From Octopus bimaculoides (taxonomy: Eukaryota): 35,905 bases of DNA. The stretch's first letter is position 1. Every line of letters begins with the position of its first letter. The notes under the pieces were generated by a model, which was given only the letters and a program-made list of their open reading frames with translations, ran no database searches and was not told the origin of the DNA. The translations under genes and the position numbers were made by a program. The stretch covers positions 94,959,070 to 94,994,974 of the forward strand of contig NC_068986.1 of assembly GCF_001194135.2 (NCBI RefSeq). The letters run 5' to 3'. This document shows positions 13,738 through 34,552 of the stretch, one piece after another.

Positions 13738-15481
13738 CGCGTATGTATGTAGCCTCGGGCCGACCAAAGCCTTATGAGAGGATTTGGTAGACGGAAACTG
13801 AAAGAAGACCGTCTTATCCATGTGTGCGTGTGTGTGTGCGCGCGCGCTCGTGTGTGTATTTGTGCGTCAGTGTTTGTCCCCCAACATCGCTTGACAACGG
13901 ATGTTGGTGCGTTTACCTCCCCGTAACTTAGCAGTTCGGCAAAACTGACCGATAGAATGTGTACCAGCCTTACAAAGAATAAGTTCTGAGGTCGATTTGC
14001 TCGACTAAAGGCGGTGCTCCAACATGGCGACTGCTGTCAAATGACTGAAGCAAGTAAAAGAATAAAAGAATAAAAGAATATATACAGTTGAAATTTACAG
14101 AAAAAACAAAAGACAAAGACAGGTGTAGGAACAACAAGCATCTGTATTAGTTTAACGCTCGGGAAGAATGGAAAAGTCTTTTACGTTTCGAGCCTACGCT
14201 CTTCGACAGAAAGGAATAAGAGGGGAAAAAACAGAGAGAATGAAGAAAAAAAGGAGAGAGAGAAATTCTGTAGAGATTAACAATTCAATACAAAAGATTT
14301 TTATTTTATTTTTTCACCATACAGCCTCATCAGAAAACTGTGGTCGCGCTGACGTTGCGCCTGATCTCAAAGGCAGAATACGAAATAAAGGAAAATCCTC
14401 AGGTATTTGGCAAAAGTATTAAAGAGACAATCACGTAAGTAATGTCATCTTACAGTTTGAAGACTACTTAATAATACGTTAGCCCTCTAAGCCATCTGTT
14501 AGACATATGAACAATTAGTATCGAGTGTATTTAGTTTGTTACTGAAGGTGGTATCTTGACGCTGGTATTAAAGGTGGTATCTTTCCCCGCAAGGGTTGAA
14601 CGGCAAGCCATCTTGGGGTGCTTTGAGACTTCCTATGTACATATCACCCAATTTGTATTTCTGGGAGGCTGAACTATTTTAGACGCCCTAGCGATTCCAA
14701 TATTAACAATCTTTTCTTTATTGTCCATAGGGTCGCACTATTTATTGATCATGCTTCAAAAACCCTGTGGAGAACTCTTGTTCTTCCAAGACATGATGCT
14801 TTTTTTAGATGTTCTATATTTATATTTGCTCCGCTCATTTTGAACCACGTTGGTAGTTGAGTACTGATATTTCCAAGCGTGCCAATTATTATCGGTATCG
14901 CGTTTAATCTCTTCATTGCCAACAACCTACGTATTTCCCACTTCAAATCATCATAGTCGTTCAAGGCTTCTTCTTTTCTCCTTTCACTCCGATCCTGTTT
15001 ATTATTATTATTGTTCAGTAGTTTTATTTTTATAACGTGCTTTCACTTCACTACCGAGCGCAGCTCTGTGCGCCTTGGGTATGTGCTGTGGTTTGCTGTG
15101 ATGCTCTTATGTTTACTGTATTGAAAGTGTTTTGCGTAGGATGTGTGCAGTACCCAGTAGTGCAATTTTCTGTATGTTATATATATTTGTAAGTCCTGGT
15201 GTTTTTGTTATGTATTTGTCTGAATATTTTTTATTAGACCTAAGACACCTACTATGATAGGAATTGTTTCTGTTTTTAGATTCCACATTCGAGTTATCTC
15301 TATTTCCAGGTCTTTGTATTTTGAAAGTTTTTCCATTTCTTTTAGAGAAACATTGTCATCTGCTGGTATTGATACATCAATTAGAAAGCATTTTTTTCTT
15401 CATGATCTTTGACAACTATATCTGGTCTATTTGCCATTATTATAATTATTATTATTACTATTATTATTATTATTATTATTA

Positions 15482-15528
<47 letters not shown>

Positions 15529-16079
15529 GAGTGAGCGAGAGAGTAGTGCATGCCATCAAATTGACACTGAGGTAAAATATACGAAGCCTAGTATATCCAT
15601 CATGGCTTCTCGTCTGATAAGAGTACACCTTGGACATGCATCACAACCATATGTGCGCGACATGATCATCTCATATCAAGATAAACAACACATGATCTTG
15701 AAGGTGGGGGCCCAGTTAGAATATTCATCAGGTTGAGTAGCCCATCCTGCTCAAAAGGTCACCGAATAAGGGTTGTTTAAGGATGATGAACGACACACTA
15801 ATTATCCAAACCCCAAAGAATTCCTCTCAACACATGGTTATGATGTTCCCCCACTACTTCTGCTCATGATTAGAGATGCACATATCGTCAGCCACCAAGG
15901 GACATGCTCAACTGGTTAAGGTCAAACAACTGACAAGCAAATATGTGGTATTGAGTAGAATATTTGTTGTAGCACATCTTTTATACCAAGACAAAACAAT
16001 GTACATGACACTTCCAATCAATTAAGATCAGAAGCCACTGCCTGGTACTGTATTCGGGCATTATTATTATTATTATTAC

Positions 16080-16140
<61 letters not shown>

Positions 16141-17313
16141 TGTATTCTTCTTGTTAAAGGCGTGAAGGGATGCTGATTCCTCTCATCGTTACCAGTTGCA
16201 TCAAGGAAATCGAGAAAAGAGGTAAGTGAATTTAGCAAGACTCTCACTAAATAATTTTCCACGTGACAACACGACTAGGGGACAATGTTATCCCATGATC
16301 TCTGCTGTCCCTTTGCTTTGTGCAGCATTATAACTTTTTTTTAGCGTAGACAACTGGGCTAAAAATATTGCATAATCGTTCGTCAGTGTCAATCATTGAA
16401 ATGCGGCCATGCTGTGGCACACTCTTCAACGGTTTTTAGTCGATCATATTGACCTCAGCCGGATATTATTTCATCGGATTCTTTTTATCGAAACGTTAAA
16501 TGTGCTTCGATCTGTAGGGACACAATTCCGGTTTACAACGCAAAGTATAAACATAAACACTGAAACGGGTACAAATATGCATGGAGACACGTGTGTGTGC
16601 ATGTGTGTGAGTGTACTGGTGCTCCGTCTGTTGCGACGACGAGGTTTTCAGCTGATCCAAACATCGAAACAACCTGCTTGTGAAATTAACTTGCAAGTGG
16701 CTGAGCATTCCACGGACAAGTGTATCCTTCACATAGTTCTCAGAGAGATTCAACGTGACACAGGAATGTGACATGGTTGGCCCCTTGAATAATAAGTACA
16801 AGTCATTTTTGCCAGCTAAGTGGACTGGAACAACGTGAAATAAAGTGATCTTCTCAAGGACATAATCCACTTACGGGAAATGAAATCATCCCCGCACTTA
16901 AACACATATTATGCCACTTTGTGGGCGTGGACCGGTGCAGTAACACCGGATGCAGGGCATGGTGCAAAGAAGATTCCTCGGGTGGCATAATATGTGTTTA
17001 AGTGCGGGTATTTAGATCTCAGCTTCGCTGCATTGAGAGATTCTATCAGTTTGGGAGGATATGTTCAAACACTTGAGCTGATAGAATCTCTCAATGCAGC
17101 GAAACTGAGATCTAAATACCCGCACTTAAAAGCATATGGAGTCTTCTTTTCCCTCTGCCCTGCATCTGATGCTATTGCACCAGTCCGCGCCCGCTCGGAA
17201 TAGTGCATCATGAAGACGAAACAATTGTCGTGATAATAGATTGTTTTTCGGTACACCTCGTCTTCTCCATTAATCTTTAATATATACATATATATATGTG
17301 TGTGTGTGTGTGT

Positions 17314-17349
<36 letters not shown>

Positions 17350-18612
17350 GCGTGTGCATGTGAATGTATGTATGTATGTATGTATGTATATTTCGTGCTC
17401 TCTTTTGTCCATGTATATGCGTTTATATTTATTAGGTTTATAAATATTCAACGAATTAATGTATATTTCATTATTTATTTTTAAGGACTGGACCAGGAAT
17501 CGTTATACATTTCGAAGGGGAACACGCTAAATGTGTGTCGCCTGTATCAAGCATTTGAACATTGTACGTATTTATTTATATCTGAGAATATGTCAGCTTA
17601 TTTTCCTAATTATTAAGCTATATATCCTCATATTTATTGCTGTGAGCATTAAAAAGTCTAACTATATTTAGCAGCATGTATAAGCGTTTTAGTTCATTTT
17701 CTGGAAATTATTCGATGCAACATAGAAATAATTAAAAATTTCCAAGAGTTTTGTAGAATATGTTCTCAACACCTATCTTAAGTTATCTTGTTAATTAGGC
17801 GTGAAAATTATCCCAGTACACAGAATATTAATATGCCAGTCGGCCAGCGAACAACAAATTTTGTCGACATTTCAAGAACGTTTCATTGGACCCCTCCAAG
17901 TGTTTGCGATGATTGTTGGTAATACGATTACACGATATCTAGAAGGCACATGGTCTAGCAGTTAGGGTATTCGACTCATGATCACATAGTCGTAAGTTCA
18001 ATACTGGTACTAAGTGGTGCGTTGCATCCTTCAACAAATCACTTCATTTCAAGTGTCTGCAGATCTACTCAGTATAATTCGTTTCAACCGATTGTTGGTA
18101 CCGCCCCACCCTGTCCTTGCAGCTGCATTATCCCGAATATTCCATGCGATCAAGGGCGAAATAGGTTTCTATGTCTGATCGCGAACACATAAGAACTGAA
18201 AACAATTAATGAAAGCATGGTAGATTCTACTAATCCATTCTCGCTTGTGTACAAAGCAGTTCAAACGTTTGGTGACCTTATTATACAGCTGAGCCAAGTC
18301 GGACTGTTAGCTGGGTTTCATCTATCCAAGAATAAGACAACAGATGATGATGTGGGAACCAAGCGTAACTGTTTTTATACTTTTATTCTGTGAGTTTTTT
18401 AATGGATTGTGGCCATGCTGGTACGCCATGTTAATTGGCTTAAGTCTATCATATCGAACCTAATAATTATTTCAGGCATGTAATTATGGTAGCCATCTCG
18501 ATTCATCGAATAACTAAATTGCTTCATGATATAAACCGGTACTACTCGACCTGCCATTTTAAACCAATATACGTGCACATACATGCACACATATCTATTC
18601 ACCACACGCGCG

Positions 18613-18661
<49 letters not shown>

Positions 18662-19301
18662 GCGTGATAAGAAGGTCGCTTCCCAACCACATGGTTCTGG
18701 GTTCAATCCGACTGTGTGACAATCGGGCAAGTGTCTTCTACTATAGCTTGGGTCGACCAAAGCCGTGTGAGTGGATTTGGTAGACGGAAATTGAAAGCCC
18801 GTTGTGTGTGTNNNNNNNNNNNNNNNNNNNNNNNNNNNNNNNNNNNNNNNNNNNNNNNNNNNNNNNNNNNNNNNNNNNNNNNNNNNNNNNNNNNNNNNNN
18901 NNNNNNNNNNNNNNNNNNNNNNNNNNNNNNNNNNNNNNNNNNNNNNNNNNNNNNNNNNNNNNNNNNNNNNNNNNNNNNNNNNNNNNNNNNNNNNNNNNNN
19001 NNNNNNNNNNNNNNNNNNNNNNNNNNNNNNNNNNNNNNNNNNNNNNNNNNNNNNNNNNNNNNNNNNNNNNNNNNNNNNNNNNNNNNNNNNNNNNNNNNNN
19101 NNNNNNNNNNNNNNNNNNNNNNNNNNNNNNNNNNNNNNNNNNNACAAATGGTGCAAATACAGCAAAATCAGCTCGCAGCGCCACTTACCGAGATTGTCGG
19201 ATGCAAACATTTCGAAGTGTTTATCTCCCCTTCAGCCACACAGCTAAGATGTCAAAATATCGTTCACTAGATAACAATGGTACTCTTCTTTTAATTTTGA
19301 T

Positions 19302-19355
<54 letters not shown>

Positions 19356-21262
19356 TACTATTATTATTATTATTATTATTATTATTGTTATTATTATTAT
19401 TATTAAGGTTGCTTATTCGCAATTTACAAAGGGCACAAGTATAGAGGTCACTAGAGTGACTGAGGGTGCTAGTCAGCACCAGTATTGCTAGGAATAAGGG
19501 TCAGAACAACTCTTAGTCACAGGGTAGTATTTATCTAATGACTGACAAGGGAGACAATCTCCCTACAACAAGCGTGGCAGAGCCAGATCACCGATCAATG
19601 ATTTCGGATTTGATTAATCCTCATCAGTAACTCTCATCCTGTAGCCGAGGGTTAAAGCTAACTCGCCATGTATGTATATGTATATGTGTATACGTCGAGG
19701 TTGCAGCTTCCGTCTAGTAGATTCTATTTAGAAGGATTACTGGGACCACCTTCGGTCATAACTGACCATGGGATTGCACCTAGAAGTTACCCTCCCAGGC
19801 ACAAGTCCGGGCAAGGTTGTTTATGGAAGACCAGCAGTCGCCCATGCATACCGGCGACCAATGTTATCCAAGGGAAAGACAAAAGGGCCGATACAGCTTG
19901 GCACCTGTGACGTTGCAACTCATTTCTACAGCTGAGTGAACTGGAGCAACGTGAAATAAAGTGTCTTGCTCAAGAACACAACACGCAGCCCGGTCCGGGA
20001 TTCGAACTCACAACCTCACGATCGTAAGCTCGACGCTCTAACCACTGAGCCATGCGCCTTCACTTAGAGGGATTAGTCACCCAGAAATTAAGGTGCCCCG
20101 TCTTCGTTCTGAAGTGATCTTTTAACCACACAGCCATGCCTATGTGTGAATACAAATATTGTAAATATAGAAATATGGTGAAAGTTCGTGATCGCATGTT
20201 TGGTATGTCGCATTCATAATCACAAGATTGTGACTTCGATTACTGGATCGAGTGGGTCGATTTGCTTTTGAGCAAAGTACTTCATTTCAATGTTCCCCGG
20301 TCCACTCAGCTATAAATGAGCGACTTTAGGATGGACTAGCGTCCCGTTCAGTGGTGGTGGGTATGTTTTTAATCTCGATCAATTATACGTCATGGAAAAT
20401 GGCCCCATGAACTTACTAAGAATATAATATGTAAATATAAGACGGTGAGCTGGCAGAGTCGTTAGCACACTGGGCGAAATGCTGTCTTCATGTTCTGAGT
20501 TCAAATTCCACTGACGTCGACTTTGCCTTTCATCCTTTCGGGAGTTGATAAAATAAGTGCTAGTTAAGTACTGGGGTCGACATAATCGCCTTACCCCCTC
20601 TTCCGAAAATACTGGCCTCGACAGCATTTCGTCCGTCTTTACGTTCTGAGTTCAAATTCCACTGACGTCGACTTTGCTTTTCATCCTTTCGGAGGTTGAT
20701 AAAATAAGTACCAGTTAAGTACTGGGTCGACAAAACCGACTTACCCCCTCTTCCGAAATTTCTGTTCTTATGCCAAGATTTGAAATCAATTATAGTATGC
20801 AAAGAGAAAATTAATAGTTCGAGAAATTATAACTTAAAAACTGTTTTTTTCACATTTTTTAAGGTCTTTTGCCTTCCTCCAAACAGGTTCGAATTCAGCC
20901 GTTGAACTCATCCAAAACCAGAAATACACCATACACGACATTTCACAATTACTACTGTGGTACATCAAAACATTGCCGATATCATTATTACAGTGTCCAG
21001 ATTCATTCATCCTCCTATACGGTGAGAACAACTACTTACCCATATTTAACATCCTTGTTTCTTTGCTTTCCTATTCTGCATGAAGCTCGATATGAAATCC
21101 GTAGTTGGGTTTCGGAGTTGCGTCCCGTGACTTTCCTGAAAAGAATCCTCAGTCGTGCTAAAGGTATTCCTTTCCCTTACAGCAATAACGTTAATTGATT
21201 TTACTTTTAATGCGTAGCAGCACATTATTTTGAATATGTCAGTATTCATATATCTCTCTCTG

Positions 21263-21302
<40 letters not shown>

Positions 21303-22044
21303 NNNNNNNNNNNNNNNNNNNNNNNNNNNNNNNNNNNNNNNNNNNNNNNNNNNNNNNNNNNNNNNNNNNNNNNNNNNNNNNNNNNNNNNNNNNNNNNNNN
21401 NNNNNNNNNNNNNNNNNNNNNNNNNNNNNNNNNNNNNNNNNNNNNNNNNNNNNNNNNNNNNNNNNNNNNNNNNNNNNNNNNNNNNNNNNNNNNNNNNNNN
21501 NNNNNNNNNNNNNNNNNNNNNNNNNNNNNNNNNNNNNNNNNNNNNNNNNNNNNNNNNNNNNNNNNNNNNNNNNNNNNNNNNNNNNNNNNNNNNNNNNNNN
21601 NNNNNNNNNNNNNNNNNNNNNNNNNNNNNNNNNNNNNNNNNNNNNNNNNNNNNNNNNNNNNNNNNNNNNNNNNNNNNNNNNNNNNNNNNNNNNNNNNNNN
21701 NNNNNNNNNNNNNNNNNNNNNNNNNNNNNNNNNNNNNNNNNNNNNNNNNNNNNNNNNNNNNNNNNNNNNNNNNNNNNNNNNNNNNNNNNNNNNNNNNNNN
21801 NNNNNNNNNNNNNNNNNNNNNNNNNNNNNNNNNNNNNNNNNNNNNNNNNNNNNNNNNNNNNNNNNNNNNNNNNNNNNNNNNNNNNNNNNNNNNNNNNNNN
21901 NNNNNNNNNNNNNNNNNNNNNNNNNNNNNNNNNNNNNNNNNNNNNNNCAGAGGCGTGGCATCATTCGAAAGCTAAAACGACGCAAACCGTATTGTGACCG
22001 GCGATATAAACATCCAGTGGTCTGATCGATCAAGTCATCACATA

Positions 22045-22103
<59 letters not shown>

Positions 22104-22447
22104 CGCGCGTGTGTGTGTTGTGTATGCATATAGCGTATATGTCTACATGGTTTGAATACTGCGTATGCACACTGCGAAGCAAAATAGATCTCAATACTCA
22201 GTATAGAGTAAAATATTTCTTCGGGTAACCAGACAAATCGAAGCATCTCAGTCGCTCTCAGTTCTTCAGACTGCGGTTATTGATGTAGCTTATCTCTATA
22301 TTTATATGATATCGGTTGATCGAAATGTTGTAGCAGTACTGAGACTGGCGTATTGTTGATAGGATGGGGTGATGGCTGGTGACTGTTTCGTCGTGTAGTT
22401 AATGTTGTAATGTGGTGTATGGTGGTGAGTTGCTTACATAGATAGAG

Positions 22448-22510
<63 letters not shown>

Positions 22511-22747
22511 CAGACAGGCTGCGAGCTGGCAGAAACGTTAGCACGCCGGGCGAAATGCTTAGCCGTATTTTGTCTGCCGTTACGTTCTGAGTTCAAATTC
22601 CGCCGAGGTCGACTTTGCCTTTCATCGGTTCGAGGTCGATAAATTAAGTACCAGTTACGCACTGGGGTCGATGTAATCGACTTAATCCCTTTGTCTGTCC
22701 TTGTTTGTACCCTCTATGTTTAACCCCTTATGGACAATAAAGAAATA

Positions 22748-22830
<83 letters not shown>

Positions 22831-25800
22831 CAGACACACGGACGGACAGACAGAGAGGGAAAAAATGCGTGTATACGTGTGTATATACGTGGATGTATGC
22901 ATGCGTCTGTGTGTGCGCGTAGGCGTGTATGGTGAAACCGAAACGAGCCAAAACTCCATAACTACATCTAACACATATCCAACACGCAAACGAAACCACC
23001 GCTATCAAACCACTGTAAAAGGTGGTACCTCCAGCTTCAGCATAATCAAGGCTGCAAGAAGATTGCAGAAGAACGCTGGATATTGAGCAAGAGCCACAAT
23101 AGCAGTTGAGCAGATCCAGGTTCTTCTACAAGAGATACAAACAAATCTGCTATGAACCAAAAGACTCGTCTCGTTTAGAGAGGCGATGGAAATGTTGCTT
23201 TAAGCGTTTCCCGTGAGCCTTGGGATAAATGGCCAGGTGAATGGTAAAACGCTGATTTGTGTGGCTTAAGATCTGGTGAGTGGAAAGGGCTGCACACACT
23301 TAAGAAGACAATGCCTAGGAGTGATTTCAGGTGATGAAGACTTCGTTATTTTTGCCAGGCGATATGGGACAAAATAGAGATAAAATTCGCCTCACGGCCA
23401 TGCTCAAACGTGAGAAATTGACTCTCATTTCGATGTATTTTGGAAGGTGAAAAGAAAGGTGATGGTGTTGGATGTGCAATCCGAATTGAACATCTGGTAA
23501 GTAGTGGTTTCCGATGCGCTAGAAGGGTGTGTCACAGTCATGGACATGAAGTACTACAAGATGCTTTGGATACCTCGAAAAAATCTTCAGCCAGAAGCAC
23601 CTTCATGGCAGCACTACCATCCTTCCAACGCCATCCCTCCAAAAATAGTGGACGAACAACACAACGTACAAAAACTCACACAAACAAATCAGACCAATAC
23701 GGTCATGCTGTTACTCTTTCCATCTGTGACGTCTCTCCTCCAGAGATTTCAACAATCTACCCACACGAGGAGAGACCATGGAAACAATTCGTGGCAGGGA
23801 GACGTAAAAGAGGAAGAATATGGTGGGGTCGAATGAGATTGCTGAAAAACTCTTCATAATCGACACCATATTTGGTACTTTGTGAAACAACACATTTGAC
23901 TTACTTTAAGCCAGTGAAATGTCAACACACAACAGAAGCAATCGACTGGTAGCTTGCAGTGTGTCGAAGCTCTCATTATATTATTTGAAACATCAAATAT
24001 TAAAATGAACGCATTGTAGTCAAAGGAAATAAATGTGACAATGAGTTACTGCATTTGCCATTCGTAGGTATATTCCCAAGTCCTCCTGGGAAACGTATCG
24101 AGCAGAAGAATCCCAGTCAGTCCACGTGATACTTCCTCATCTGCCGTGACCATGTGGAATGCTGTCGACCAACACGCGCCGTCAACTCAGCCGGGTCCTC
24201 AGTGAAAAGAATAGGGTCTAACTCAGAAAATCGAGCAACATGAACAAGCAGTCGGAGCTGCCATCTGTATGATTCGAAGAACAAGGAGATATAAGAATTT
24301 TCATGATCCAACATTTCAATGACAGCTTCATTTAAAAGCTCGTTCTAAAGCTGGAGAAACTGGAACGGGCAGGTGTTCGCCATGTGGCAATAATGCAATT
24401 GAATATGGGATGAATGGACAGGACAACTTCGTCCTACCTTATGATCCTTTATAATTAGACACGTCCAACATACAAAAATAGCAGTCGTTTTGATGGTCTG
24501 TCGGTTCTTGCCAGCTTCTCGGAATATCAAACGGCATGCATTTCCCAATTTTCCATCCTTCTAATGTAAATTTGTAACTACCACAGATGACATAATGAAC
24601 CCTGGTTAGTCCCGGTCTCGAATGGGATTGCCGAAAAATTCTTCATAATCGACACCATATTTGGTACTTTGTGAAACAACACATTTGACTTACTTTAAGC
24701 CAGTGAAATGTCAACACACAACAGAAGCAATCAACTGGTAGCCTGCAGTGTCTCGAAGCTATCATTATATTATTTGAAACATCAAATATCAAAATGAATG
24801 CATTGCAGTCAAAGGAAATAAATGTGACACAAGCTAAATATTGAAAGACTTCGTGATTCTTTATTAATTTTCTTTTTGTACAACTCTTACAATTTTCAAA
24901 AAATAGCTTACTTGAATATTTGTAAAATACTGCTCTTATATACTAGAACAAAAAAAAAACGACTTCATGAGTTTCATAAATATGCAAACATGTTTTCTTG
25001 CGTTTACTCGAACAGTTCTATCAATAGTAGCCTATTGTTATGCGGTTTATTGTCTGTATGAATATTTTAGCATCAGTGAAGTCTACCATTTTTTTTTTAT
25101 TCTGGAAAGTTCTAAACAAAAGCAGAACCTTGAAATTAGTGTAATTTCAACACAGTGTTACACGACAGAAAAAAAAATTGTTTCGATATAACTGATAAAA
25201 TATTGATGCTATTATGAAAAGAATGAAAATAATTTTACCGTCATGTTTAGAACGCTGAAAATATGCAAGAAACTTTAAAGAAAACGTCACGTGAAGAATT
25301 TTCTGTTGTGATGTGTTACAGACAAAATTCATTCAGGTGGCTCTGCTCTAACGGCTGGGATGGATTTGTCTGTTCGAATCTGTTTAAAATGCGCGCAGGT
25401 TAACGTAACTGCCGTCGGTACTCATTCGTTCAATGGCTGTTTTTTGTTTATGTTGAGTACCGTTTATCAGGTTATTTGAAACGGATTCGCCTTTCAGCCG
25501 ATCTCTTGGAAAGATAGACCAATCGTCTTTTTTAGCAAGAAAGAGCGAGTCGTCTACCGCTCTCTGATTGCTATGACAAAGGGAATTGTATCGTTGATAC
25601 TGTTGAAAGGTTTATGACAAAGCTTTTTCTCCCCGGCTAAGGTCTTATCAATTTTTACAATATCATTTAGGAGGAATGTATGAGTAAAGAGAGAGAAGTG
25701 CTAACCCCTTGTGTAATTTATGGATGACAGTAACAAAAATAAGCATGGATAAATGGGCCCCTAATTAACAATGAATTTGTAAGCTGACACCAAGAACTCA

Positions 25801-26939
25801 TGCAGGCACTTGCTTTTTGGTATGTATATGTAATCTTGTGGTCATATCATTCCATTTAGTGGAAATTTCGTTTTATTTTATTGTTCTGTTGTGTTATTGC
25901 TATTTATCATTTGCTGTCTTTATTGTTTAGTTATTTCCCCGCTTTTAACTAATATAAATTCCCCACTAATATGTTTTTCTTTTGGATTTTTGCCTTTATC
26001 TTGTTTCCCCGATCTCGTGGGTCCTTGTAACCAATAAAAGAATTCATCATTATGATTGATATTGAGTCGGCGAGTTGGCAGAATCGTTAGCACGCCGGGG
26101 AAAATGCTTAGCGACATTTCTGAGTTGAATAGCCGACGCGGTCGACTTTGCCTTTCATTCTTTTGGGGTAAATAAATCAAGTAACAGTGAAACACTAGAG
26201 TGGATGTAATTGACTAGTCCCCTCCCACCAACTTTCAGGCTCTGTGCCTTTAGTAGAAAGGATTATTATTGTTAAGGCAGCGAGCTGGGCAAAATGCTTT
26301 GCGGCATTTCGTCCATCTTTACGTTCTGAGTTCAAATTCCGCCGAGGTCGACTTTACCTTTTATCCTTTTGGAGTCGATAAACTAGGTACAGTTGAGTAC
26401 TGGCATCGATGTGATCGACTAGTCCCCTCCCCTAAAATTCAGGCTTTGTGCCGTTAGTAGAAAGGTTATTATTATTATTATAGTTATCATTTTCCAATTG
26501 GCTTGCATTTTATTTTATCTTTTGACGGAGTCTCAACCAGAAACCTCAGGCACGTATATATTAAATATAGAGAAACTTCCTGAGAATGTCGGTGGTTAAT
26601 ATCGACACAATTTTCTGAGTCACATTGATTGTTAGTATCCCAGGGATCTAGTCGAAAAACTTTTCAGTACCTTTTTTTTTATCATTCCCGGGGCACCTAC
26701 AACATCAGGGATGGTTTTGATTTTTAATTGCCACGTCCAAGATATCTCAATCTCAAGGTCCTTATCTTTCGACAGTTTTTCAAATTCCTTTGTTGAGATG
26801 TTTCTATCCGTAGTTACTGTAACGTCAATTAGCAGGCATGTTCTTTACTTTAGGTCTTTGATGACGATGTCTGATCTGTTAGCATCTATTTGCCTGTCTG
26901 TATGTATCCCAAAATCTCATACGATAGTAACATTCCCTC

Positions 26940-26992
<53 letters not shown>

Positions 26993-27314
26993 GTGAGTGA
27001 GTGAGAGAGCAGTGCATGCCATCAAAGTGACACAGGGGTAAAATATACGAAGCCCATTATACCCATCATGACTACCCGTCTGATAAGGGTACACCAGGCA
27101 CATGCATCACAACCATATGTGCGCGACATGGTGATCTCATATCAAGATAAACAGCGCATGACCTCGCAGGTGGGGCCTAGTTAGAATTTTCTTCAGGTCG
27201 AGTAGCCCATCCTGTTCAAAAGGTCCCTAAATAAGGTTTGTTTAAGGATGTTGAACAAAACACCCATGTTTCCAAAGGTGAATTATTCAAACCCCCAAAG
27301 AATTCCTCTCAACA

Positions 27315-27353
<39 letters not shown>

Positions 27354-29414
27354 AGATATATACAATGAAACTAGAAAAGAGATAGCCCTCAGGTCACTGA
27401 TTTGCCAATTACCCATGGAAGAACGTCGCGTTTTATTCTGTCTTTTGGATCATTTCGTTAAGTAAGCTACCTGTTCCATTTCTTCCAGTTACTAATGAAA
27501 GAAAGATTTATGATGGAAAAAATAGACAGATTCTGCCTAGTCACCATTCTAAATCACTCCCTGCCATGTTAAATTAGGAAATGTTGTACTAGATACTCTA
27601 GTCTCACGTTAAACGCACTATGATGACATTAAGGCTGCATGGTCGCAGTGTAGGGACTGCTTCAGCGAGCAAGCCTCACTACGACTGCTCAATATGCTAG
27701 AAATAGCAGCTAAATCTCCCTTAAATTACACTTTATCGTCTTAAAATTCTTCACACCGCACCTTTTAAGCAAGAAATTACACGCTGGGATAATGTAATTT
27801 TATGTACCCTTAAGACATGATGATCGTAGGTAGAATGAATTTGATTGTAAGTATGTTTAATCAAAGTACAACTGTGTTAATCGACTACCACAACAACAAC
27901 AACAATAGCAACAACAACAACAATAGCAACAACGACAACAATAAAACTTATAACAAATTCTTAACCTGAAAGCTCCCTAATCTATTCCTAAATGTTGCCA
28001 AACTGGAATAAATTATTTTAACACTTTAGACATCACTTCTAGAAAACACAGATATTTCCGTTCAACTGCTTATAAATATAAGCATTTCTGGCAGCGTCAT
28101 TTGTAAATATATGCATCTATGACAGTACTATTAATACATAGAAGCATTTCTGGCTACACTATTTGTAAATATAATCGTTTCCAGCTGCACTACTAGTAAA
28201 TATAAACATTCCTGGCAACACTACTAATCGATATAAACATTTCTGGTTGTAATACTAGTAAATATAAATATTTCTAATAACTCTGCTCCAAAATATGAAT
28301 GTCTCTGGCCACACTACTAGTCCCGTATTTTAACGTGTATAAAGAACCCTTTTTTTTGTCAAAATTTAGGTTTTAAAAATATGTTTCTTATACATGGATC
28401 TCTTACAAAGCCTTTTTACAAATGTTTAGCCCCCCCCCCCAAAAAAAAAATAGGGGTTCATTATACACGTTAAAATACGGTAAATATAAACGATTTTTGG
28501 CAAAACTACTAATAAATATAAACGTTTGTGGCAACAGTTGTAGTAAAGATGCGCTATTTCCTGCAGAAGATGAGTCAGGAACCCAGACGATTGGGGAAAG
28601 CCATCAAGGAGATAGTCGTGGCAGCTGAAACTAGTTCATGGTGGTTATGGTTGATAGGGTACAGCAAGTGGAAGCCTTCCATAGGTGAACACTAGTTCAG
28701 TCCTTGCTGCCCCACTCAGACAAAGCGTACAGGCTAAAGGGCGAAACGCTTGTGATCCTGAGATACCTGAGGGCGATACGGAAGGGTTTCCAGTATTGCA
28801 ATAGATTTAGAAGGGCTTGCAAAACATGTGAGTAGCTTCCGCAGTTTCTACGTGGGGACAGCATCTCTAACGTTTATTTCACCATCTATTTTTTTTTAAG
28901 GGTAAAAACCCCTTTCGGTCCGAGGCACAACTACGGGAAAGGTTGTTTCGGAGGAAACGTTAATCTTCTCTCCACAACAACAAACTAATTTTACTCCACT
29001 TTGCGAACGTTCTGTTTTCACTAATTACCGAAACAGATCGCTTGTTTCATTAGACTGCATTGTTTCATTATTAATACCAGTTCGAATTTGCTAAAAGCAC
29101 GTTCGAACCTGTAAACAAGACAGTAAACATACAATGCTAAAATGCAAAATGTAATGTTTCATTATATTCCTCTCTGCTACGTTTGCCATGTAAACTATAC
29201 TAATTATTTTTTCCTTGTTCTCTGCAGAGTTTGTAGACACATAGGAAACAAAATAACACCTACAGCAGTGGGACGGATACTCTGTGCTGTGTTTTATGAC
29301 TTAGAAGGTTCAGAAAAAACATCAGAGTACCGGAAACAGCAGAATAAGTTTGTCAGTGTAATGGAATACATTGTTTACTTGAGATTAGAAGGAATCAGTC
29401 TTTACACAAATTAA
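175..29414 (+). CDS. BCR/ABR-like: 3' part of a divergent BCR/ABR-family gene (PH end - C2 - RhoGAP), 15 exons, ~476 aa in window: join(175-281,871-924,1763-1904,2395-2421,3706-3752,4258-4288,4503-4577,6688-6893,13402-13467,14325-14434,16160-16221,17486-17563,20887-21021,27356-27461,29228-29414)
   Basis: All exons are bounded by AG/GT, phases match, and the frame stays open to TAA at 29412-29414. Motifs are colinear with human BCR: [13 protein letters not shown]~ESLLLLMSPSMAF; [14 protein letters not shown]~YTFLISSDYERAEW; [14 protein letters not shown]~LYCTLEVDSFGYF; VFGKSI~VFGVKI; [16 protein letters not shown]~VPYIVRQCVEEIERRG; LLDHFVKV~LLDHLKRV. Orthology versus paralogy not established. 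Confidence 0.9.
871..924 (+). CDS. Exon b: [18 protein letters not shown]
   Basis: Acceptor tttatacttcacag, donor GTGAGG; 54 nt; the only open frame; aligns with BCR KATERLKKKLSEQ. Confidence 0.8.
1405..1624 (+). mobile_element. Mariner-derived MITE
   Basis: ~30-bp TIRs (cgaggaggtgctgaaaagttcctggcttt / aaagccaggaacttttcggcatcccctcg) flanked by TA; internal [23 protein letters not shown] resembles a mariner transposase C-terminus. Confidence 0.85.
1653..1724. repeat. (GT)n microsatellite
   Basis: Direct. Confidence 0.98.
1763..1904 (+). CDS. Exon c (PH C-terminal strand and helix): [47 protein letters not shown]
   Basis: Acceptor ctttattccacag, donor GTACGT at 1905 (phase 1); contains the PH signature Trp helix. 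Confidence 0.85.
1983..2190 (+). mobile_element. Decayed SINE, family A
   Basis: Similar to the full copy at 22517-22750. Confidence 0.55.
2395..2421 (+). CDS. Candidate 27-nt microexon d: YDLLLASYV
   Basis: Acceptor tatttccag, donor GTACGT at 2422; symmetric phase 1-1; restores the Trp-to-EL spacing seen in BCR (22 vs 21 residues; 13 without it). Confidence 0.5.
3706..3752 (+). CDS. Exon e: [16 protein letters not shown]
   Basis: Strong acceptor ttttcttcttgtacttcag, donor GTAAGT; aligns with BCR VELQMLTNSCVKLQ. Confidence 0.8.
4258..4288 (+). CDS. Exon f (31 nt): [10 protein letters not shown]
   Basis: Acceptor ttattttctattcatag, donor GTAAGT; aligns with BCR IPLTINKED. Confidence 0.8.
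4503..4577 (+). CDS. Exon g (C2 start): [25 protein letters not shown]
   Basis: Acceptor ctttatctgcag, donor GTTTGT; aligns with BCR LYGFLNVIVHSATGF. Confidence 0.85.
4927..4964. repeat. (GATA)n microsatellite
   Basis: Direct. Confidence 0.95.
5274..5655 (-). mobile_element. Full-length tRNA-derived SINE, family B
   Basis: Minus-strand head GGAGGCGCAATGGCCCAGTGG (A box) and GGTTTCGATTTCC (B box); 3' tail shared with 16620-16870. Confidence 0.85.
5705..5890 (-). mobile_element. Decayed SINE, family A
   Basis: ggaatttgaactcagaa = reverse complement of the family A B-box region. Confidence 0.55.
6266..6512. repeat. (CT)n - N gap 6336-6472 - (AT)n
   Basis: Direct. Confidence 0.95.
6688..6893 (+). 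CDS. Exon h (C2 core): [69 protein letters not shown]
   Basis: Acceptor atattttcag, donor GTAAAT; VDSFG, PxFDExFDI and LKICFY motifs of the BCR/ABR C2 domain. Confidence 0.92.
7085..7475 (-). mobile_element. SINE family C (CORE-like)
   Basis: Reverse complement of the copies at 13745-14080 and 18665-18811; CORE-like accttaggtaagtgccttct segment. Confidence 0.8.
7662..8033 (+). CDS. Orphan intronic 123-aa ORF with predicted signal peptide (possible nested gene or TE relic)
   Basis: ATG start, no low-complexity sequence; [19 protein letters not shown] fits a signal peptide with a V-R-A cleavage site; no homolog recognised. Confidence 0.3.
   Translation: MTLASCIFCIAFFTSVVRARMRYVQVEAESKEKNRYVAQTRQPSGRNLRIMMVYDKDMEIEKKITKMKNLIRVRLDPEVFEPEERAVLLEKEKVDKLIDLFGCRIRTTGLYFQYDNLPTLQTT
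8255..8893 (+). mobile_element. Internally deleted mariner transposase relic
   Basis: HTH region ([17 protein letters not shown]) joined to [18 protein letters not shown] at 8607-8636; stops and frameshifts; decayed right TIR. Confidence 0.85.
9653..9737. repeat. (TATG)n microsatellite
   Basis: Direct. Confidence 0.95.
9737..9960 (+). mobile_element. 5'-truncated SINE family A with duplicated 3' part
   Basis: Matches the body of 22517-22750; the segment gcact-ggggcaatgtaatcgac recurs. Confidence 0.6.
10223..10448. repeat. CT/CTTT-rich tract followed by (ACAT)n
   Basis: Direct. Confidence 0.92.
10913..10983. repeat. (GATA)n microsatellite
   Basis: Direct. Confidence 0.97.
11020..11335 (-). 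mobile_element. Dispersed repeat (possible Penelope-like pLTR fragment), with a head-to-head second arm running into a gap
   Basis: Reverse-complement match to 34553-34860; inverted arms 11230-11277 and 11287-11335. The Penelope assignment is inference. Confidence 0.6.
11554..11666. repeat. Compound (GT)n after N gap 11336-11553
   Basis: Direct. Confidence 0.95.
11830..12251 (+). mobile_element. Decayed LINE 3' end (RTE-like) with C2H2 fingers
   Basis: [23 protein letters not shown] (C-x2-C-x12-H-x3-H) at 12174-12242, preceded by a disrupted finger ending [10 protein letters not shown]; no TGEKP linker. Confidence 0.45.
13305..13346. repeat. (AAC)n(AGC)n trinucleotide tract, intronic
   Basis: Direct; 55 nt upstream of exon i. 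Confidence 0.9.
13402..13467 (+). CDS. Exon i: [22 protein letters not shown]
   Basis: Acceptor atttctaatccatcag, donor GTAAGT; 66 nt, phase 0-0; position matches the short BCR LDPQAL segment. Confidence 0.75.
13745..14080 (+). mobile_element. SINE family C, head lost or replaced by (GT)n
   Basis: agcctcgggccgaccaaagcc...gcggtgctccaacatggc...aagtaaaagaataaaagaa tail. Confidence 0.85.
14325..14434 (+). CDS. Exon j (C2 end and pre-GAP linker): [36 protein letters not shown]
   Basis: Acceptor ttttttcaccatacag, donor GTAAGT; VFG motif that precedes RhoGAP domains. Confidence 0.88.
14745..14975 (-). mobile_element. R4/Dong-like LINE fragment (restriction-like endonuclease C-terminus)
   Basis: [30 protein letters not shown]...[13 protein letters not shown] (ORF 14749-14964). 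Confidence 0.75.
14998..15445 (-). mobile_element. 5'-truncated R4/Dong-like LINE (RLE domain and 3' UTR)
   Basis: [24 protein letters not shown]...[17 protein letters not shown]...[17 protein letters not shown] (one frameshift); PD..D..K nuclease motif; both ends abut TAA repeats. Confidence 0.88.
15529..16060 (-). mobile_element. Non-coding retroposon embedded in (TAT)n (family D)
   Basis: Clear match to 26993-27316; (TAT)n on both sides; shared end next to the (AAT)n tail. Confidence 0.75.
16160..16221 (+). CDS. Exon k (RhoGAP start): [21 protein letters not shown]
   Basis: Acceptor ttcttcttgttaaag, donor GTAAGT; IPxIVxxCIxEIExRG RhoGAP signature. Confidence 0.92.
16385..16610 (-). mobile_element. 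Decayed SINE family C, 3' half
   Basis: gcggccatgctgtggcac...ttagtcga matches 7100-7160. Confidence 0.55.
16620..16870 (-). mobile_element. SINE fragment with family B 3' tail
   Basis: gcttgtgaaattaacttgcaagtggctgagca matches 5338-5370; aacgtgaaataaagtg matches 19949-19964. Confidence 0.7.
16891..17008. mobile_element. MITE-like element with perfect 27-bp terminal inverted repeats
   Basis: cccgcacttaaacacatattatgccac (16891-16917) and its exact reverse complement (16982-17008). Confidence 0.65.
16990..17137. repeat. Near-perfect hairpin, 60-bp arms and 28-nt loop
   Basis: Arms 16990-17049 and 17078-17137 are 57/60 complementary. Confidence 0.95.
17281..17390. repeat. Compound (TA)/(TG)/(TATG) microsatellite
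   Basis: Direct. Confidence 0.95.
17486..17563 (+). CDS. Exon l (arginine-finger loop, Arg absent): [26 protein letters not shown]
   Basis: Acceptor ttatttatttttaag, donor GTACGT; phase 1-1; aligns with [25 protein letters not shown]. Confidence 0.85.
17945..18075 (+). mobile_element. Decayed tRNA-derived SINE head
   Basis: tggtctagcagttag (A-box-like) and aagttcaatac (B-box-like). Confidence 0.45.
18665..18811 (+). mobile_element. SINE family C, 5' half, truncated by an assembly gap
   Basis: ggttctgggttcaatcc B box, then gggcaagtgtcttctactatagc...gaccaaagcc. Confidence 0.85.
18812..19143. other. Assembly gap (N)
   Basis: Direct. Confidence 1.
19302..19406. repeat. Inverted (TAA)n/(TTA)n microsatellite palindrome
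   Basis: Direct. Confidence 0.92.
19745..20062 (-). mobile_element. tRNA-derived SINE (family E)
   Basis: Minus-strand head GGCGCATGGCTCAGTGGTTAGAGC...GAGTTCGAATCCC with near-consensus A and B boxes, then cttgagcaagacacttt. Confidence 0.85.
20443..20790 (+). mobile_element. SINE family A with local tandem duplication
   Basis: Two bodies share the private variants aaattccactgacgtcgac and ttaccccctcttccgaaa. Confidence 0.8.
20887..21021 (+). CDS. Exon m (RhoGAP middle): [45 protein letters not shown]
   Basis: Acceptor gccttcctccaaacag, donor GTGAGA; aligns with [21 protein letters not shown]. Confidence 0.87.
21303..21947. other. Assembly gap (N)
   Basis: Direct. Confidence 1.
22439..22850. 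repeat. (GATA)n and (GACA)n(GATA)n arrays flanking a SINE
   Basis: Direct. Confidence 0.92.
22517..22750 (+). mobile_element. Full-length SINE family A
   Basis: gcgagctggcagaaacgttag...GAGTTCAAATTCC...aataaagaaataag; resembles described octopus tRNA-derived SINEs (OK/OR families; exact assignment not verified). Confidence 0.88.
23829..24829 (+). repeat. 212-bp direct repeats (23829-24040 and 24618-24829), 10 mismatches
   Basis: Direct comparison; the repeated unit contains the transposase start region on the minus strand. Confidence 0.92.
24050..24765 (-). mobile_element. Chapaev/CMC-like DNA transposase relic (N-terminal Cys-rich domain)
   Basis: [15 protein letters not shown]...[18 protein letters not shown]...[29 protein letters not shown]...[10 protein letters not shown] matches the recalled WREPxxHxxDCYFC signature; stops and frameshifts. 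Confidence 0.65.
26065..26470 (+). mobile_element. Two head-to-tail SINE family A copies (26065-26270 and 26274-26470)
   Basis: Both carry gtcgacttt...gactagtcccctccc...ttagtagaaagg-(tta) tails. Confidence 0.8.
26470..26940 (-). mobile_element. 5'-truncated R4/Dong-like LINE (RLE domain and 3' UTR)
   Basis: [21 protein letters not shown]...CLLIDV...[23 protein letters not shown]; ends in (TAA)n. Confidence 0.8.
26993..27316 (-). mobile_element. 5'-truncated family D retroposon between (TAT)n arrays
   Basis: Homologous to 15529-15835. Confidence 0.78.
27356..27461 (+). CDS. Exon n: [35 protein letters not shown]
   Basis: Acceptor (TAT)n-tacag, donor GTAAGC; LP...L..LLDH RhoGAP motif. Confidence 0.9.
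28070..28560. repeat. Degenerate ~31-bp minisatellite (about 11 units)
   Basis: Consensus approx. actactagtaaatataaacatttctggcaac. Confidence 0.7.
28323..28480. mobile_element. Pogo/Tigger-type MITE
   Basis: 27-bp TIRs ccgtattttaacgtgtataaagaaccc / gggttcattatacacgttaaaatacgg (26/27); right flank TA. Confidence 0.8.
28570..28780 (+). mobile_element. HERO/NeSL-like LINE 3' fragment
   Basis: [22 protein letters not shown]...* resembles the AIK..S.AAE..S.WLWL C-terminus of HERO-type elements. Confidence 0.5.
29228..29414 (+). CDS. Terminal exon o: [62 protein letters not shown]
   Basis: Strong acceptor ttttccttgttctctgcag; NK motif of the RhoGAP NKM segment; stop TAA. Confidence 0.88.
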
Positions 29415-29459: not shown

Positions 29460-29629
29460 AGAGCAAAACTAAGTTGCTAAATAACGTTTTTCATCGTATT
29501 AATTATTTTTGGCATTTCACATTCTGAGTTCAAATCCCGAAGGAATTAACTTTGCCTTTCTTTATTTTAAGATCGATAAATAAAGTACCAATCAAATGAC
29601 GTGTTCTGCTATAAGCACAAAGTCAGAAA

Positions 29630-29770
29630 TTTTGGAAGAGGGGCTCTAATAGATTACATCGACTCCAGTACTCAACGGGTACTTATATTATCTACCCCGA
29701 AAGGTAAGGTCCGTCGAAATACTGCGAAGCGTTTTACTCGGAGCGGTCACGATTCTACCAGCTCATCGCT
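29630..29770 (-). mobile_element. Decayed SINE family A
   Basis: gattacatcgactccagtac...cgattctaccagctc. Confidence 0.55.
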
Positions 29771-34435: not shown

Positions 34436-34552
34436 AGGAGCAACTCATCTCACAGGTCATTAACCTAACAATCTATTAATATAAAGCATACATACATAGT
34501 ACATACATACATACATACATACACACATACATACATACCTACATACATATCC

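What the first reader, a model, noticed from the sequence alone, without database searches (positions are those of the whole stretch)
17486..29414. Intact BCR/ABR-family gene whose RhoGAP domain lacks the catalytic residues (pseudo-GAP)
Seen: the frame is open through canonical splice sites to the stop. Against human BCR, the arginine finger GIYRVSG (R1090) reads SLYISKG (Ile, ATT 17509-17511). LKLYFRELPEP reads [11 protein letters not shown] (Lys->Leu 20955-20957; Arg->Lys 20967-20969). HNLATVFGP (N1202) reads TAVGRILCA (Asn->Ala 29265-29267). Established: R1090 and N1202 substitutions abolish BCR GAP activity toward Rac/Cdc42. Inference: loss of all these GTPase-contact residues while the hydrophobic core and reading frame are kept points to a pseudo-enzyme. 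It could be a GEF-only protein, scaffold or Rac-GTP sponge, uncoupling the dual GEF/GAP switch of BCR/ABR.
Basis: partly seen in the sequence, partly recalled or inferred. Interest (0 to 1): 0.85.

Follow-up and report, generated by a model that had tools for sequence, protein, structure and literature searches.

The report
Octopus BCR-like gene with dead GAP domain
This is a real, already annotated Octopus bimaculoides gene, one of at least four clustered fast-evolving copies of the BCR/ABR signalling gene, whose GTPase-switch-off (RhoGAP) domain keeps its fold but has lost the catalytic arginine and its partner residues, so it joins the known class of "pseudo-GAPs".

Summary
The exon chain 16160-16221 | 17486-17563 | 20887-21021 | 27356-27461 | 29228-29414 is open, with GT-AG at every junction and matching phases. 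It equals the C-terminus of NCBI's 484-aa "breakpoint cluster region protein" of Octopus bimaculoides. Both N gaps lie in introns, and no protein segment is missing. The domain is a confident RhoGAP fold (Pfam 4.8e-20; AlphaFold pLDDT above 90; Foldseek TM 0.81-0.87). It reads Ile, Leu, Lys and Ala where 84-95 of 96 catalytic homologues read Arg, Lys, Arg and Asn.

New context:
- The gene is one of at least four paralogs in a 240-kb cluster, and all of them lack the finger.
- A canonical catalytic ABR/BCR persists in an octopod (Argonauta).
- The family predates the Octopus/Argonauta split.
- The family evolves fast: dN/dS is about 0.4-0.5 in the PH and C2 cores and about 0.8-1 elsewhere, yet its reading frames are protected from indels.
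- The 484-aa model is cut at its N-terminus by an assembly gap. DH-end and PH exons lie upstream.

The pseudo-GAP reading is supported by sequence and predicted fold. The "GEF-only" and "Rac-GTP sponge" readings are not supported, because the GTPase-binding determinants are gone too and the DH domains of relatives are degenerate. This is a new member of a known kind, of moderate interest.

The parts
192..281 (+). Coding exon 1 of the annotated model P0001, whose ATG is at 192. It corresponds to the PH-insert region of BCR/ABR. It is probably an internal exon whose upstream partners are lost in the assembly gap that borders the window.
   Evidence: an AG sits directly before position 192; DH-end and PH exons upstream of the gap
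871..924 (+). Coding exon 2
1763..1904 (+). Coding exon 3: the C-terminal strands and helix of the PH domain ([47 protein letters not shown])
3706..3752 (+). Coding exon 4 (linker)
4258..4288 (+). Coding exon 5 (linker)
4503..4577 (+). Coding exon 6: first strand of the C2 domain
6688..6893 (+). Coding exon 7: C2 core ([12 protein letters not shown]...)
   Evidence: Pfam C2 E=8e-4, 20 bits, just under the gathering score
10143..10208 (+). Coding exon 8 (C2)
13402..13467 (+). Coding exon 9 (66 nt, frame-neutral). It has no counterpart in paralogs B, C and D or in canonical BCR/ABR, and it is modelled as disordered. It may be a cassette exon or an over-predicted one.
   Evidence: (pLDDT below 50 at residues 241-258)
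14325..14434 (+). Coding exon 10: last C2 strand and the linker to the GAP-like domain
16160..16221 (+). Coding exon 11: RhoGAP helix A ([20 protein letters not shown])
17486..17563 (+). Coding exon 12: the finger loop, SLYISKG in place of GIYRVSG. Ile (ATT) is at 17509-17511 where the arginine finger should be. Lys (AAG) at 17515-17517 sits at finger+2.
18812..19143 (.). Assembly gap inside the intron between exons 12 and 13
20887..21021 (+). Coding exon 13: [11 protein letters not shown] in place of LKLYFRELPEP. Leu is at 20955-20957 (the Lys319 position) and Lys at 20967-20969 (the Arg323 position).
21303..21947 (.). Assembly gap inside the intron between exons 13 and 14
27356..27461 (+). 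Coding exon 14 ([34 protein letters not shown])
29228..29414 (+). Coding exon 15: [14 protein letters not shown] in place of NKMSLHNLATVFGP. Ala is at 29265-29267 (the Asn391/N1202 position). The stop TAA is at 29412-29414.

Best explanation
The window holds the C-terminal two thirds (end of PH, C2, RhoGAP-like) of an octopod-specific paralog of the BCR/ABR gene. I call it paralog A. It lies on O. bimaculoides chromosome CM046606.1 at about 94.96-94.99 Mb.

Shown:
- The exon chain is open and canonically spliced.
- The C-terminal domain keeps the RhoGAP fold.
- It has Ile at the arginine-finger position, Leu at Lys319, Lys at Arg323, and Ala, Arg and Ala at Asn391, Val394 and Pro398 (p50RhoGAP numbering).
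- Three further paralogs (B, C, D) in the same 240-kb cluster also lack the finger.

Inferred:
- The finger was lost once, before the copies multiplied, and before Octopus and Argonauta split.
- The domain cannot stimulate GTP hydrolysis by the canonical arginine-finger mechanism, and it probably binds Rho GTPases poorly or differently.
- It survives as a non-catalytic module, either a protein-interaction surface or an intramolecular regulatory surface, in a DH-like/PH/C2 membrane-associated scaffold.
- The normal GEF/GAP switch stays with the canonical ABR/BCR gene.
- The family evolves fast under weak constraint on sequence but clear constraint on an open reading frame.
For: - Exons and phases. 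The chain is identical to the NCBI model P0001.
- RhoGAP homology: Pfam 4.8e-20; PDB hits ARHGAP15, GRAF and others at 5e-9 and weaker.
- Fold: AlphaFold2 with a 100-sequence alignment gives pLDDT above 90 over residues 290-480. Foldseek finds RhoGAP domains at TM 0.81-0.87 and rmsd 2.2-3.4 A.
- Selective loss: 23 of 33 strongly conserved columns are kept. The ten lost include all four of the finger Arg, Lys, Arg and Asn. Structural invariants (F, G, P, C, G, Y, F, L, P, P, H) are kept in all three aligned paralogs, A, B and C.
- Paralogs: B reads FIYIMRG, C reads NIYLIPG, D reads YVYVQKG. All share the same exon structure. A, B and C form a clade in 100% of bootstraps, next to the Argonauta canonical gene (50%), and they share a 2-residue insertion with it.
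- Canonical octopod gene with GIYRVSG, LKLYFRELP and NKMTNGNLAVIFG.
- Age: Argonauta has a C-type paralog whose GAP-like half still scores RhoGAP 3e-15.
- Frame maintenance, measured on paralog B between O. bimaculoides and O. vulgaris: 0 indels in 675 exonic nt against 9.0 per kb in introns (P about 0.003), and no stop codon (P about 0.05). Applied to A's 1455-nt frame, these rates make an intact frame very unlikely (of order 1e-4) if A had been neutral since that split. This last step is my inference.
- Folded domains, the GAP-like one included, are more alike among paralogs (32-49%) than the linkers are (17-24%).
- Literature: the arginine finger is required and R1090A gives GAP-dead Bcr (PMC6713510). 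Finger-less RhoGAP domains are inactive, and p85 also lacks the binding determinants (PMC8305018).
Against: - No expression or splice-junction data could be consulted. No orthologue of paralog A itself was found in another species, so selection on A is argued only from its intact frame and from its sisters.
- Where it could be measured, sequence constraint in the family is weak. The overall dN/dS is 0.90 for B (PH and C2 cores 0.4-0.5, linkers 1.0-1.5) and 0.8-0.9 for the one GAP-like exon of C that was available. The latter rests on only 12-19 differences.
- Lack of GAP activity is inferred from sequence, not measured.
- A, B and D carry Lys or Arg two residues after the lost finger, at a position that is never basic in 96 catalytic homologues. 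Its role is unknown.
- The N-terminal half of the gene (DH domain) was not recovered.
Confidence: 0.68

Rival explanations
1. Paralog A is a functionless, recently relaxed duplicate (an incipient pseudogene). Its loss of catalytic residues is simply decay.
For: dN/dS is near 1 in large parts of sister paralogs: B overall 0.90, and the C GAP-like exon 0.8-0.9. No orthologue of A was found in the protein databases. No assembled transcript (Logan source) is on record for P0001. Exonic and intronic substitution rates in B are equal, 8.4% against 8.8%.
Against: The 484-codon frame spans 15 canonically spliced exons and is intact. The loss of residues is not random but concentrated on the GTPase interface, while the fold core is kept. 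The same loss is shared by four paralogs that have since diverged to 30-40% identity, and by a lineage shared with Argonauta. The predicted fold is very confident. In B, indels are excluded from exons (P about 0.003) and the PH and C2 cores have dN/dS of 0.4-0.5.
Confidence: 0.15
2. One reading: the protein is a GEF-only enzyme, or its dead GAP domain acts as a Rac-GTP-binding sponge or effector-like module.
For: DH-end and PH exons lie upstream of the window. The product annotated upstream of paralog B, and the O. sinensis C-type neighbour, both carry a Pfam RhoGEF hit. OCRL1 is a precedent for a finger-less RhoGAP domain that still binds Rac-GTP (PMC8305018).
Against: The binding determinants besides the finger (Lys319, Arg323, Asn391, Val394, Pro398) are replaced, as in p85, which shows no detectable GAP activity toward Rho proteins and lacks most of these determinants (PMC8305018). 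The DH regions of the full-length D paralog and of Argonauta's C-type paralog score only 21-23 bits, below Pfam's 27.6-bit threshold. No Pfam hit is on record for the product upstream of A. Only the last DH helix of A was seen.
Confidence: 0.15
3. The domain is still an active GAP. Catalysis would come from another residue (for example the Lys at finger+2) or from an arginine-bearing alternative exon hidden in the assembly gap at 18812-19143.
For: A, B and D have Lys, Arg and Lys at finger+2, where none of 96 catalytic homologues has a basic residue. The gap cannot be read.
Against: The finger exon lies upstream of the gap and is itself spliced in frame. The same exon lacks Arg in all four paralogs. 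The equivalent intron of paralog C is gap-free and holds no extra exon. There is no finger-like exon elsewhere in the window. Lys319 and Asn391 are lost as well. I know of no precedent for a +2 finger in the RhoGAP fold (own knowledge).
Confidence: 0.06

Closest known systems
Canonical BCR/ABR (human BCR and ABR; molluscan and other invertebrate orthologues such as Mytilus BCR1 and Argonauta hians ABR-like)
   Same: Colinear similarity from the PH insert through C2 to the RhoGAP domain, at 26-31% identity and E down to 5e-25. DH-end and PH N-terminal exons lie upstream. There is a C2 signature ([10 protein letters not shown]). A 2-residue insertion is shared with the octopod canonical gene.
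   Different: The finger Arg, Lys and Asn are lost and Arg323 is replaced by Lys. The sequence evolves much faster. The gene is an extra copy in a four-gene cluster. There is no C-terminal tail after the GAP-like domain. The DH status is unknown.
Human finger-less RhoGAP-like proteins (pseudo-GAPs): OCRL1/INPP5B, the p85alpha/beta BH domain, ARHGAP36, DEPDC1/DEPDC1B, FAM13B, CNTD1 (list from PMC8305018)
   Same: The RhoGAP fold is kept and the catalytic arginine is absent. As in p85, the surrounding binding determinants are also missing.
   Different: The origin is independent, from a BCR/ABR ancestor within cephalopods. The domain context differs (DH-like, PH, C2). No biochemical data exist.
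Octopus paralogs B (XP_014790547), C (XP_052824455) and D (O. bimaculoides XP_014782260; O. sinensis XP_036359371, 1070 aa)
   Same: Same exon structure, same chromosome cluster, and the finger is lost in all. Identity to A is 30-41%.
   Different: The replacement residues differ: I, I, L and V at the finger, and L, T, M and L at Lys319. B keeps Arg323. D has a long Lys/Ser-rich C-terminal tail. A has an extra 22-residue exon.

Membership tests
BCR/ABR family (DH-PH-C2-RhoGAP architecture) | C-terminal RhoGAP-fold domain | tested here: met
   Pfam PF00620 E=4.8e-20, 72 bits against a gathering score of 24.5. AlphaFold pLDDT above 90 and Foldseek TM 0.81-0.87 to RhoGAP structures.
BCR/ABR family (DH-PH-C2-RhoGAP architecture) | C2 domain directly before the RhoGAP domain | tested here: inconclusive
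   Pfam C2 gives 20 bits, E=8e-4, just under the gathering score of 22. The region is modelled as a beta-sandwich with pLDDT 80-90 and is colinear with the C2 of BCR/ABR.
BCR/ABR family (DH-PH-C2-RhoGAP architecture) | PH domain | tested here: inconclusive
   The C-terminal PH exon is in the window at 1763-1904. The N-terminal PH exon is upstream at L001 7206-7331 (tblastn E 1e-4 to 3e-9). The middle part presumably lies in the assembly gap. There is no Pfam PH hit.
BCR/ABR family (DH-PH-C2-RhoGAP architecture) | DH (RhoGEF) domain | tested here: inconclusive
   Only the last DH helix exon was found, at L001 6293-6374. The upstream annotated product has no Pfam hit on record. Relatives give sub-threshold RhoGEF hits or recorded RhoGEF hits.
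BCR/ABR family (DH-PH-C2-RhoGAP architecture) | Closest relatives outside the species are BCR/ABR orthologues, aligned colinearly | tested here: met
   HMMER against 1.84 billion representatives. After the octopus paralogs, the best hits are BCR/ABR of molluscs, a brachiopod, an annelid and a chelicerate, matching query residues about 35-434.
Catalytically competent RhoGAP | Arginine finger (p50RhoGAP Arg282 / BCR R1090) | tested here: not met
   Ile325 (ATT 17509-17511). The column reads Arg in 95 of 96 homologues.
Catalytically competent RhoGAP | Conserved Lys319 and the binding determinants Arg323, Asn391, Val394 and Pro398 | tested here: not met
   They read Leu, Lys, Ala, Arg and Ala. The determinants are as listed in PMC8305018.
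Catalytically competent RhoGAP | Stimulates GTP hydrolysis on a Rho-family GTPase | not testable with these tools
   Needs a biochemical assay.
Pseudo-GAP (RhoGAP-like domain without catalysis, retained by selection) | Fold retained while the finger is absent | tested here: met
Pseudo-GAP (RhoGAP-like domain without catalysis, retained by selection) | Retention by purifying selection | tested here: inconclusive
   For: an intact 15-exon frame, the loss shared by 4 old paralogs and by an Argonauta relative, and indel exclusion plus dN/dS of 0.4-0.5 in the PH and C2 cores of paralog B. Against: dN/dS of 0.8-0.9 in the one measurable GAP-like exon, from paralog C. There is no orthologue of A.

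The most novel reading that the evidence does not exclude
The finger was relocated, not simply lost. Paralogs A, B and D carry Lys, Arg and Lys two residues after the old finger position, a site that is never basic in 96 catalytic homologues. This residue could reach the nucleotide and give weak or regulated GAP activity. In A both relevant lysine codons (AAG 17515-17517 at finger+2; AAA 20967-20969 at the Arg323 position) could be recoded to arginine by the A-to-I editing that is common in octopus, which would make GAP competence conditional at the RNA level. The Ile finger codon (ATT) cannot be edited back to Arg.
Probability: 0.05. Interest if true: 0.75.

Novelty: new member of a known kind. 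Interest (0 to 1): 0.38.

Why it matters
Catalytically dead RhoGAP-like domains are an established class (OCRL1, p85, ARHGAP36, DEPDC1), so the principle is not new. The gene itself is already in NCBI's annotation under the name "breakpoint cluster region protein", which is misleading.

Three things are new here:
- BCR/ABR, normally a single conserved dual GEF/GAP regulator in invertebrates, gave rise in octopods to a cluster of at least four fast-evolving copies.
- All of these copies lost the arginine finger early and have nevertheless kept the fold since before the Octopus/Argonauta split.
- The cluster is a compact natural example of pseudo-enzyme birth by duplication, and a possible lineage-specific addition to Rho-GTPase signalling in a cephalopod.

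The work also flags annotation problems. The gene models of A, B, C and D in O. bimaculoides are split or truncated, at least A and B at assembly gaps.

Tried and rejected
- Word-index homology search with the GAP piece alone found nothing, not even the window's own protein. Negative results of that tool are therefore weak.
- The search with the concatenated exons returned only P0001 and no orthologue of A.
- A search with the upstream DH/PH exon peptides, meant to retrieve the 345-aa upstream product, failed. DNA further upstream could not be fetched, so the DH domain of A remains unseen. tblastn of canonical DH regions against the 8 kb available found only the last helix.
- The O. vulgaris locus of paralog B (L004) ends before its GAP-like exons. 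dN/dS of a GAP-like domain could therefore be measured only on one exon of paralog C against O. sinensis.
- Literature support for the N1202 mutation was not found in the library. The claim rests on the equivalent Asn391 of p50RhoGAP (PMC8305018).
- I first considered OCRL/INPP5B, DEPDC1 and p85 as the identity of a finger-less C-terminal RhoGAP domain. I rejected them once the C2, PH and helix-A exons matched BCR/ABR.
- I rejected a retrogene origin because there are 15 introns at positions shared with the paralogs.
Full report
**1. Where the window comes from**

The window is Octopus bimaculoides chromosome CM046606.1 (GCA_001194135.2), roughly 94,959,070-94,994,974, plus strand. It is a contig bounded on both sides by large scaffold gaps: L001 8111-9809 upstream and 45715-47888 downstream.

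**2. The observation**

Reading the DNA gives the exon chain 16160-16221 | 17486-17563 | 20887-21021 | 27356-27461 | 29228-29414.
- Every junction has an AG acceptor and a GT donor, and the split codons match (g|ga = Gly, t|gt = Cys, g|at = Asp, aa|a = Lys).
- A brute-force splice search over 15 exons has a single solution, and it reproduces the NCBI protein "breakpoint cluster region protein [Octopus bimaculoides]" (P0001, 484 aa) residue for residue.

**3. The assembly gaps**

- Gaps 18812-19143 and 21303-21947 both lie inside introns.
- Across both junctions the protein aligns to canonical BCR/ABR and to its paralogs without a missing segment. Only a 2-residue loop difference appears.
- Pfam's RhoGAP profile is matched continuously, positions 1-137 of 148.
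- In paralog C the intron equivalent to the first gapped intron is fully read and has no extra exon.
- A motif scan of the whole window finds no alternative finger exon.
- A hidden arginine-bearing exon is therefore very unlikely, though the gaps cannot be read.

**4. What the domain is**

- Sequence: Pfam RhoGAP gives E=4.8e-20. The PDB sequence search hits ARHGAP15, GRAF, Rgd1p, DLC1, MgcRacGAP and chimaerins, with the finger Arg of each aligned to Ile.
- Predicted fold: AlphaFold2 with a 100-sequence alignment gives pLDDT above 90 for residues about 290-480 and 80-90 for the C2 sandwich. Foldseek against the PDB returns RhoGAP domains at target-normalised TM 0.81-0.87 and rmsd 2.2-3.4 A.
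- Catalytic columns: among 96 catalytic homologues the finger column is Arg in 95, the Lys319 column is Lys in 95, the Arg323 column is Arg in 90, and the Asn391 column is Asn in 84 of 89.
- Conserved columns: of 33 columns at least 80% conserved in the GAP domain, the octopus protein keeps 23. The ten it changes are G322S, R325I, S327K, D357T, K366L, R370K, L421F, M432I, N436A and L437V, which include all four known catalytic or binding residues. The chance of hitting all four with ten changes among 33 columns is about 0.005 (my arithmetic).
- Literature: R1090A is the standard GAP-dead Bcr (PMC6713510). Finger-less RhoGAP domains are inactive, and p85 additionally lacks Arg323, Asn391, Val394 and Pro398 (PMC8305018). 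This protein likewise lacks all four: Arg323 is Lys, Asn391 is Ala, Val394 is Arg, and Pro398 is Ala.

**5. Family and context**

A HMMER search of 1.84 billion representatives found O. bimaculoides paralogs first, then BCR/ABR orthologues of molluscs, Lingula, Owenia and Limulus. The latter are 26-31% identical, colinear over query residues about 35-434, and all carry GIYRVSG, LKLYFRELP and NKMSxxNLATxFGP.

The paralogs lie on the same chromosome (positions):

| Paralog | Position (Mb) | Strand | Finger motif |
|---|---|---|---|
| D | 94.79 | + | YVYVQKG (from the full-length O. sinensis orthologue, 1070 aa, 30% identical to A) |
| C | 94.86-94.89 | - | NIYLIPG |
| A (this gene) | 94.96-94.99 | + | SLYISKG |
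| B | 95.00-95.02 | - | FIYIMRG |

- They form two tail-to-tail pairs.
- All share the same exon structure.
- In a neighbour-joining tree A, B and C are monophyletic in 100% of bootstraps. They sit next to the canonical gene of the octopod Argonauta hians, weakly (50%), and share a 2-residue insertion with it.
- That canonical gene (1515 aa) keeps the finger, the Lys and the Asn.
- Argonauta also has a C-type paralog (GAB1608410/11) close to its canonical gene. Its GAP-like half still scores RhoGAP at 3e-15.
- The duplication and the finger loss therefore predate the Octopus/Argonauta split.
- I did not directly retrieve the canonical gene of O. bimaculoides itself.

**6. The gene is longer than annotated**

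- Upstream of the 1.7-kb assembly gap that borders the window lie two exons. One encodes the last DH helix (L001 6293-6374...KYIPPDKRDYMEMRLAV...). The other encodes the first PH strands (L001 7206-7331, HPLKSGYAVQVINRKRYLRYLFLFPNNLIIT). The second ends in an unused GTAAGT donor.
- NCBI annotated this part as a separate 345-aa product.
- The same split is seen for B, C and D in O. bimaculoides. O. vulgaris and O. sinensis models join the parts.
- The DH regions of D (O. sinensis) and of Argonauta's C-type copy score only 21-23 bits on Pfam RhoGEF, below the 27.6-bit threshold. The products next to B, and the O. sinensis C-type copy, have RhoGEF hits on record.
- Whether A has a working GEF module is therefore open.

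**7. Selection**

No orthologue of A could be obtained, so I measured its sisters.

| Comparison | Region | dN/dS (NG86) |
|---|---|---|
| B, O. bimaculoides vs O. vulgaris, 220 codons | overall | 0.90 |
| B | PH C-terminus | 0.51 |
| B | C2 core exon | 0.41 |
| B | linkers | 1.0-1.5 |
| C, O. bimaculoides vs O. sinensis, last exon (72 codons) | GAP-like part and tail | 0.8-0.9 (from only 12-19 differences) |

- In paralog B, exonic substitution divergence is 8.4% against 8.8% in 10 kb of introns.
- Exons have 0 indels in 675 nt, whereas introns have 9.0 gap openings per kb (P about 0.003).
- Random placement of the observed substitutions gives a stop-free frame only 4.8% of the time.
- Among paralogs the folded domains, the GAP-like one included, are 32-49% identical, against 17-24% for linkers.
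- The family is thus maintained as open, foldable proteins but evolves fast, either under weak constraint or with some adaptive turnover.
- With these measured rates, A's 1455-nt frame over 15 exons would very probably be broken had it been neutral since the O. bimaculoides/O. vulgaris split (my inference). Any pseudogenisation of A would therefore have to be recent.

**8. Mechanism**

Most likely (about 0.68): the domain is a non-catalytic RhoGAP-like module in an extra BCR/ABR-derived scaffold.
- It cannot supply an arginine finger.
- Having lost the binding determinants as well, it probably does not engage Rho GTPases in the canonical way.
- What it binds instead is unknown.

One unexplained detail feeds the most novel reading. 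A, B and D have Lys, Arg and Lys two residues after the old finger, a site occupied by Ser, Cys, Ala, Asn, Pro or Gly and never by a basic residue in 96 catalytic homologues. In A, this Lys codon and the Lys codon at the Arg323 position could both be recoded to Arg by A-to-I editing. This is speculation and was not tested.

**9. Novelty and verdict**

- Pseudo-GAPs are a known class (PMC8305018), and the gene is already annotated.
- No paper in the library links octopus to BCR-like genes.
- The clustered, old, fast-evolving, uniformly finger-less BCR/ABR paralogs of octopods appear to be undescribed.
- This is a new member of a known kind, of moderate interest.
The pseudo-enzyme inference is supported at the level of sequence and predicted fold. 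The specific functional proposals are not supported.

Noticed in passing
L001 6293-6374 and 7206-7331 (2.5-3.5 kb upstream of the window start, across the N gap at L001 8111-9809): DH-end and PH N-terminal exons of the same gene are annotated as a separate 345-aa product. The gene models of paralogs A, B, C and D in O. bimaculoides are all split or truncated, those of A and B at assembly gaps.
   Followed up: partly
L001 48200-48316 (minus strand), just beyond the window end and the gap at L001 45715-47888: Paralog B lies tail-to-tail with this gene. Its annotated protein stops at ...DHMAK, so its last exon (the one with the Asn position) is probably lost in the gap.
   Followed up: partly
L002 29609-29695 and 30062-30148: Paralog C carries two identical copies of the helix-A exon (RREKRDVPLILESCVKFIEERG) among small gaps. 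NCBI's model XP_052824455 includes both. This is either an assembly artefact or an exon duplication.
   Followed up: no
window 13402-13467: A 66-nt frame-neutral exon is present only in paralog A and is modelled as a disordered loop in the C2 domain. It may be a cassette exon or an over-predicted one.
   Followed up: partly
window 8067-8820 (+): Remnant of a mariner/Mos1-like transposase in intron 7. There is a weak HTH_48 hit (E=0.017), and the peptide ...[14 protein letters not shown] is typical of the C-terminal part of such transposases (my reading).
   Followed up: partly
window 12099-12248 (+): A short open frame with a C2H2 zinc-finger signature (zf-met E=8e-5) sits inside an intron. 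It is probably a fragment of a dispersed zinc-finger gene or of a repeat.
   Followed up: partly
window 33160-34450 (both strands): Reverse-transcriptase-like open frames (RVT_1 E=0.046, weak) lie downstream of the gene. They are probably a decayed LINE.
   Followed up: partly
window 20440-20725, 22521-22682, 26051-26477, 29522-29945, 30960-31157, 5771-5838: A SINE-like repeat of roughly 140-160 nt (translating as ...[17 protein letters not shown]...) occurs at least 8 times on both strands, at 66-86% identity.
   Followed up: partly
window 16066-16141 and 27318-27352: Long (ATT)n microsatellites sit directly upstream of the acceptor sites of exons 11 and 14, in the place of a polypyrimidine tract. 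(GT)n runs flank several other exons, for example 17300-17350.
   Followed up: no
protein P0100 (Logan contig, organism unknown): This is the only other finger-less sequence among 96 aligned homologues (YLYSQAG). It otherwise keeps Lys319 and Arg323 and scores RhoGAP at 7.6e-36. It is a possible independent pseudo-GAP.
   Followed up: no
window 17515-17517; the equivalent site in paralogs B and D: Lys, Arg and Lys at finger+2 in A, B and D. This position is never basic in 96 catalytic homologues (Ser 82, Cys 5, Ala 3, Asn 2, Pro 2, Gly 1).
   Followed up: partly
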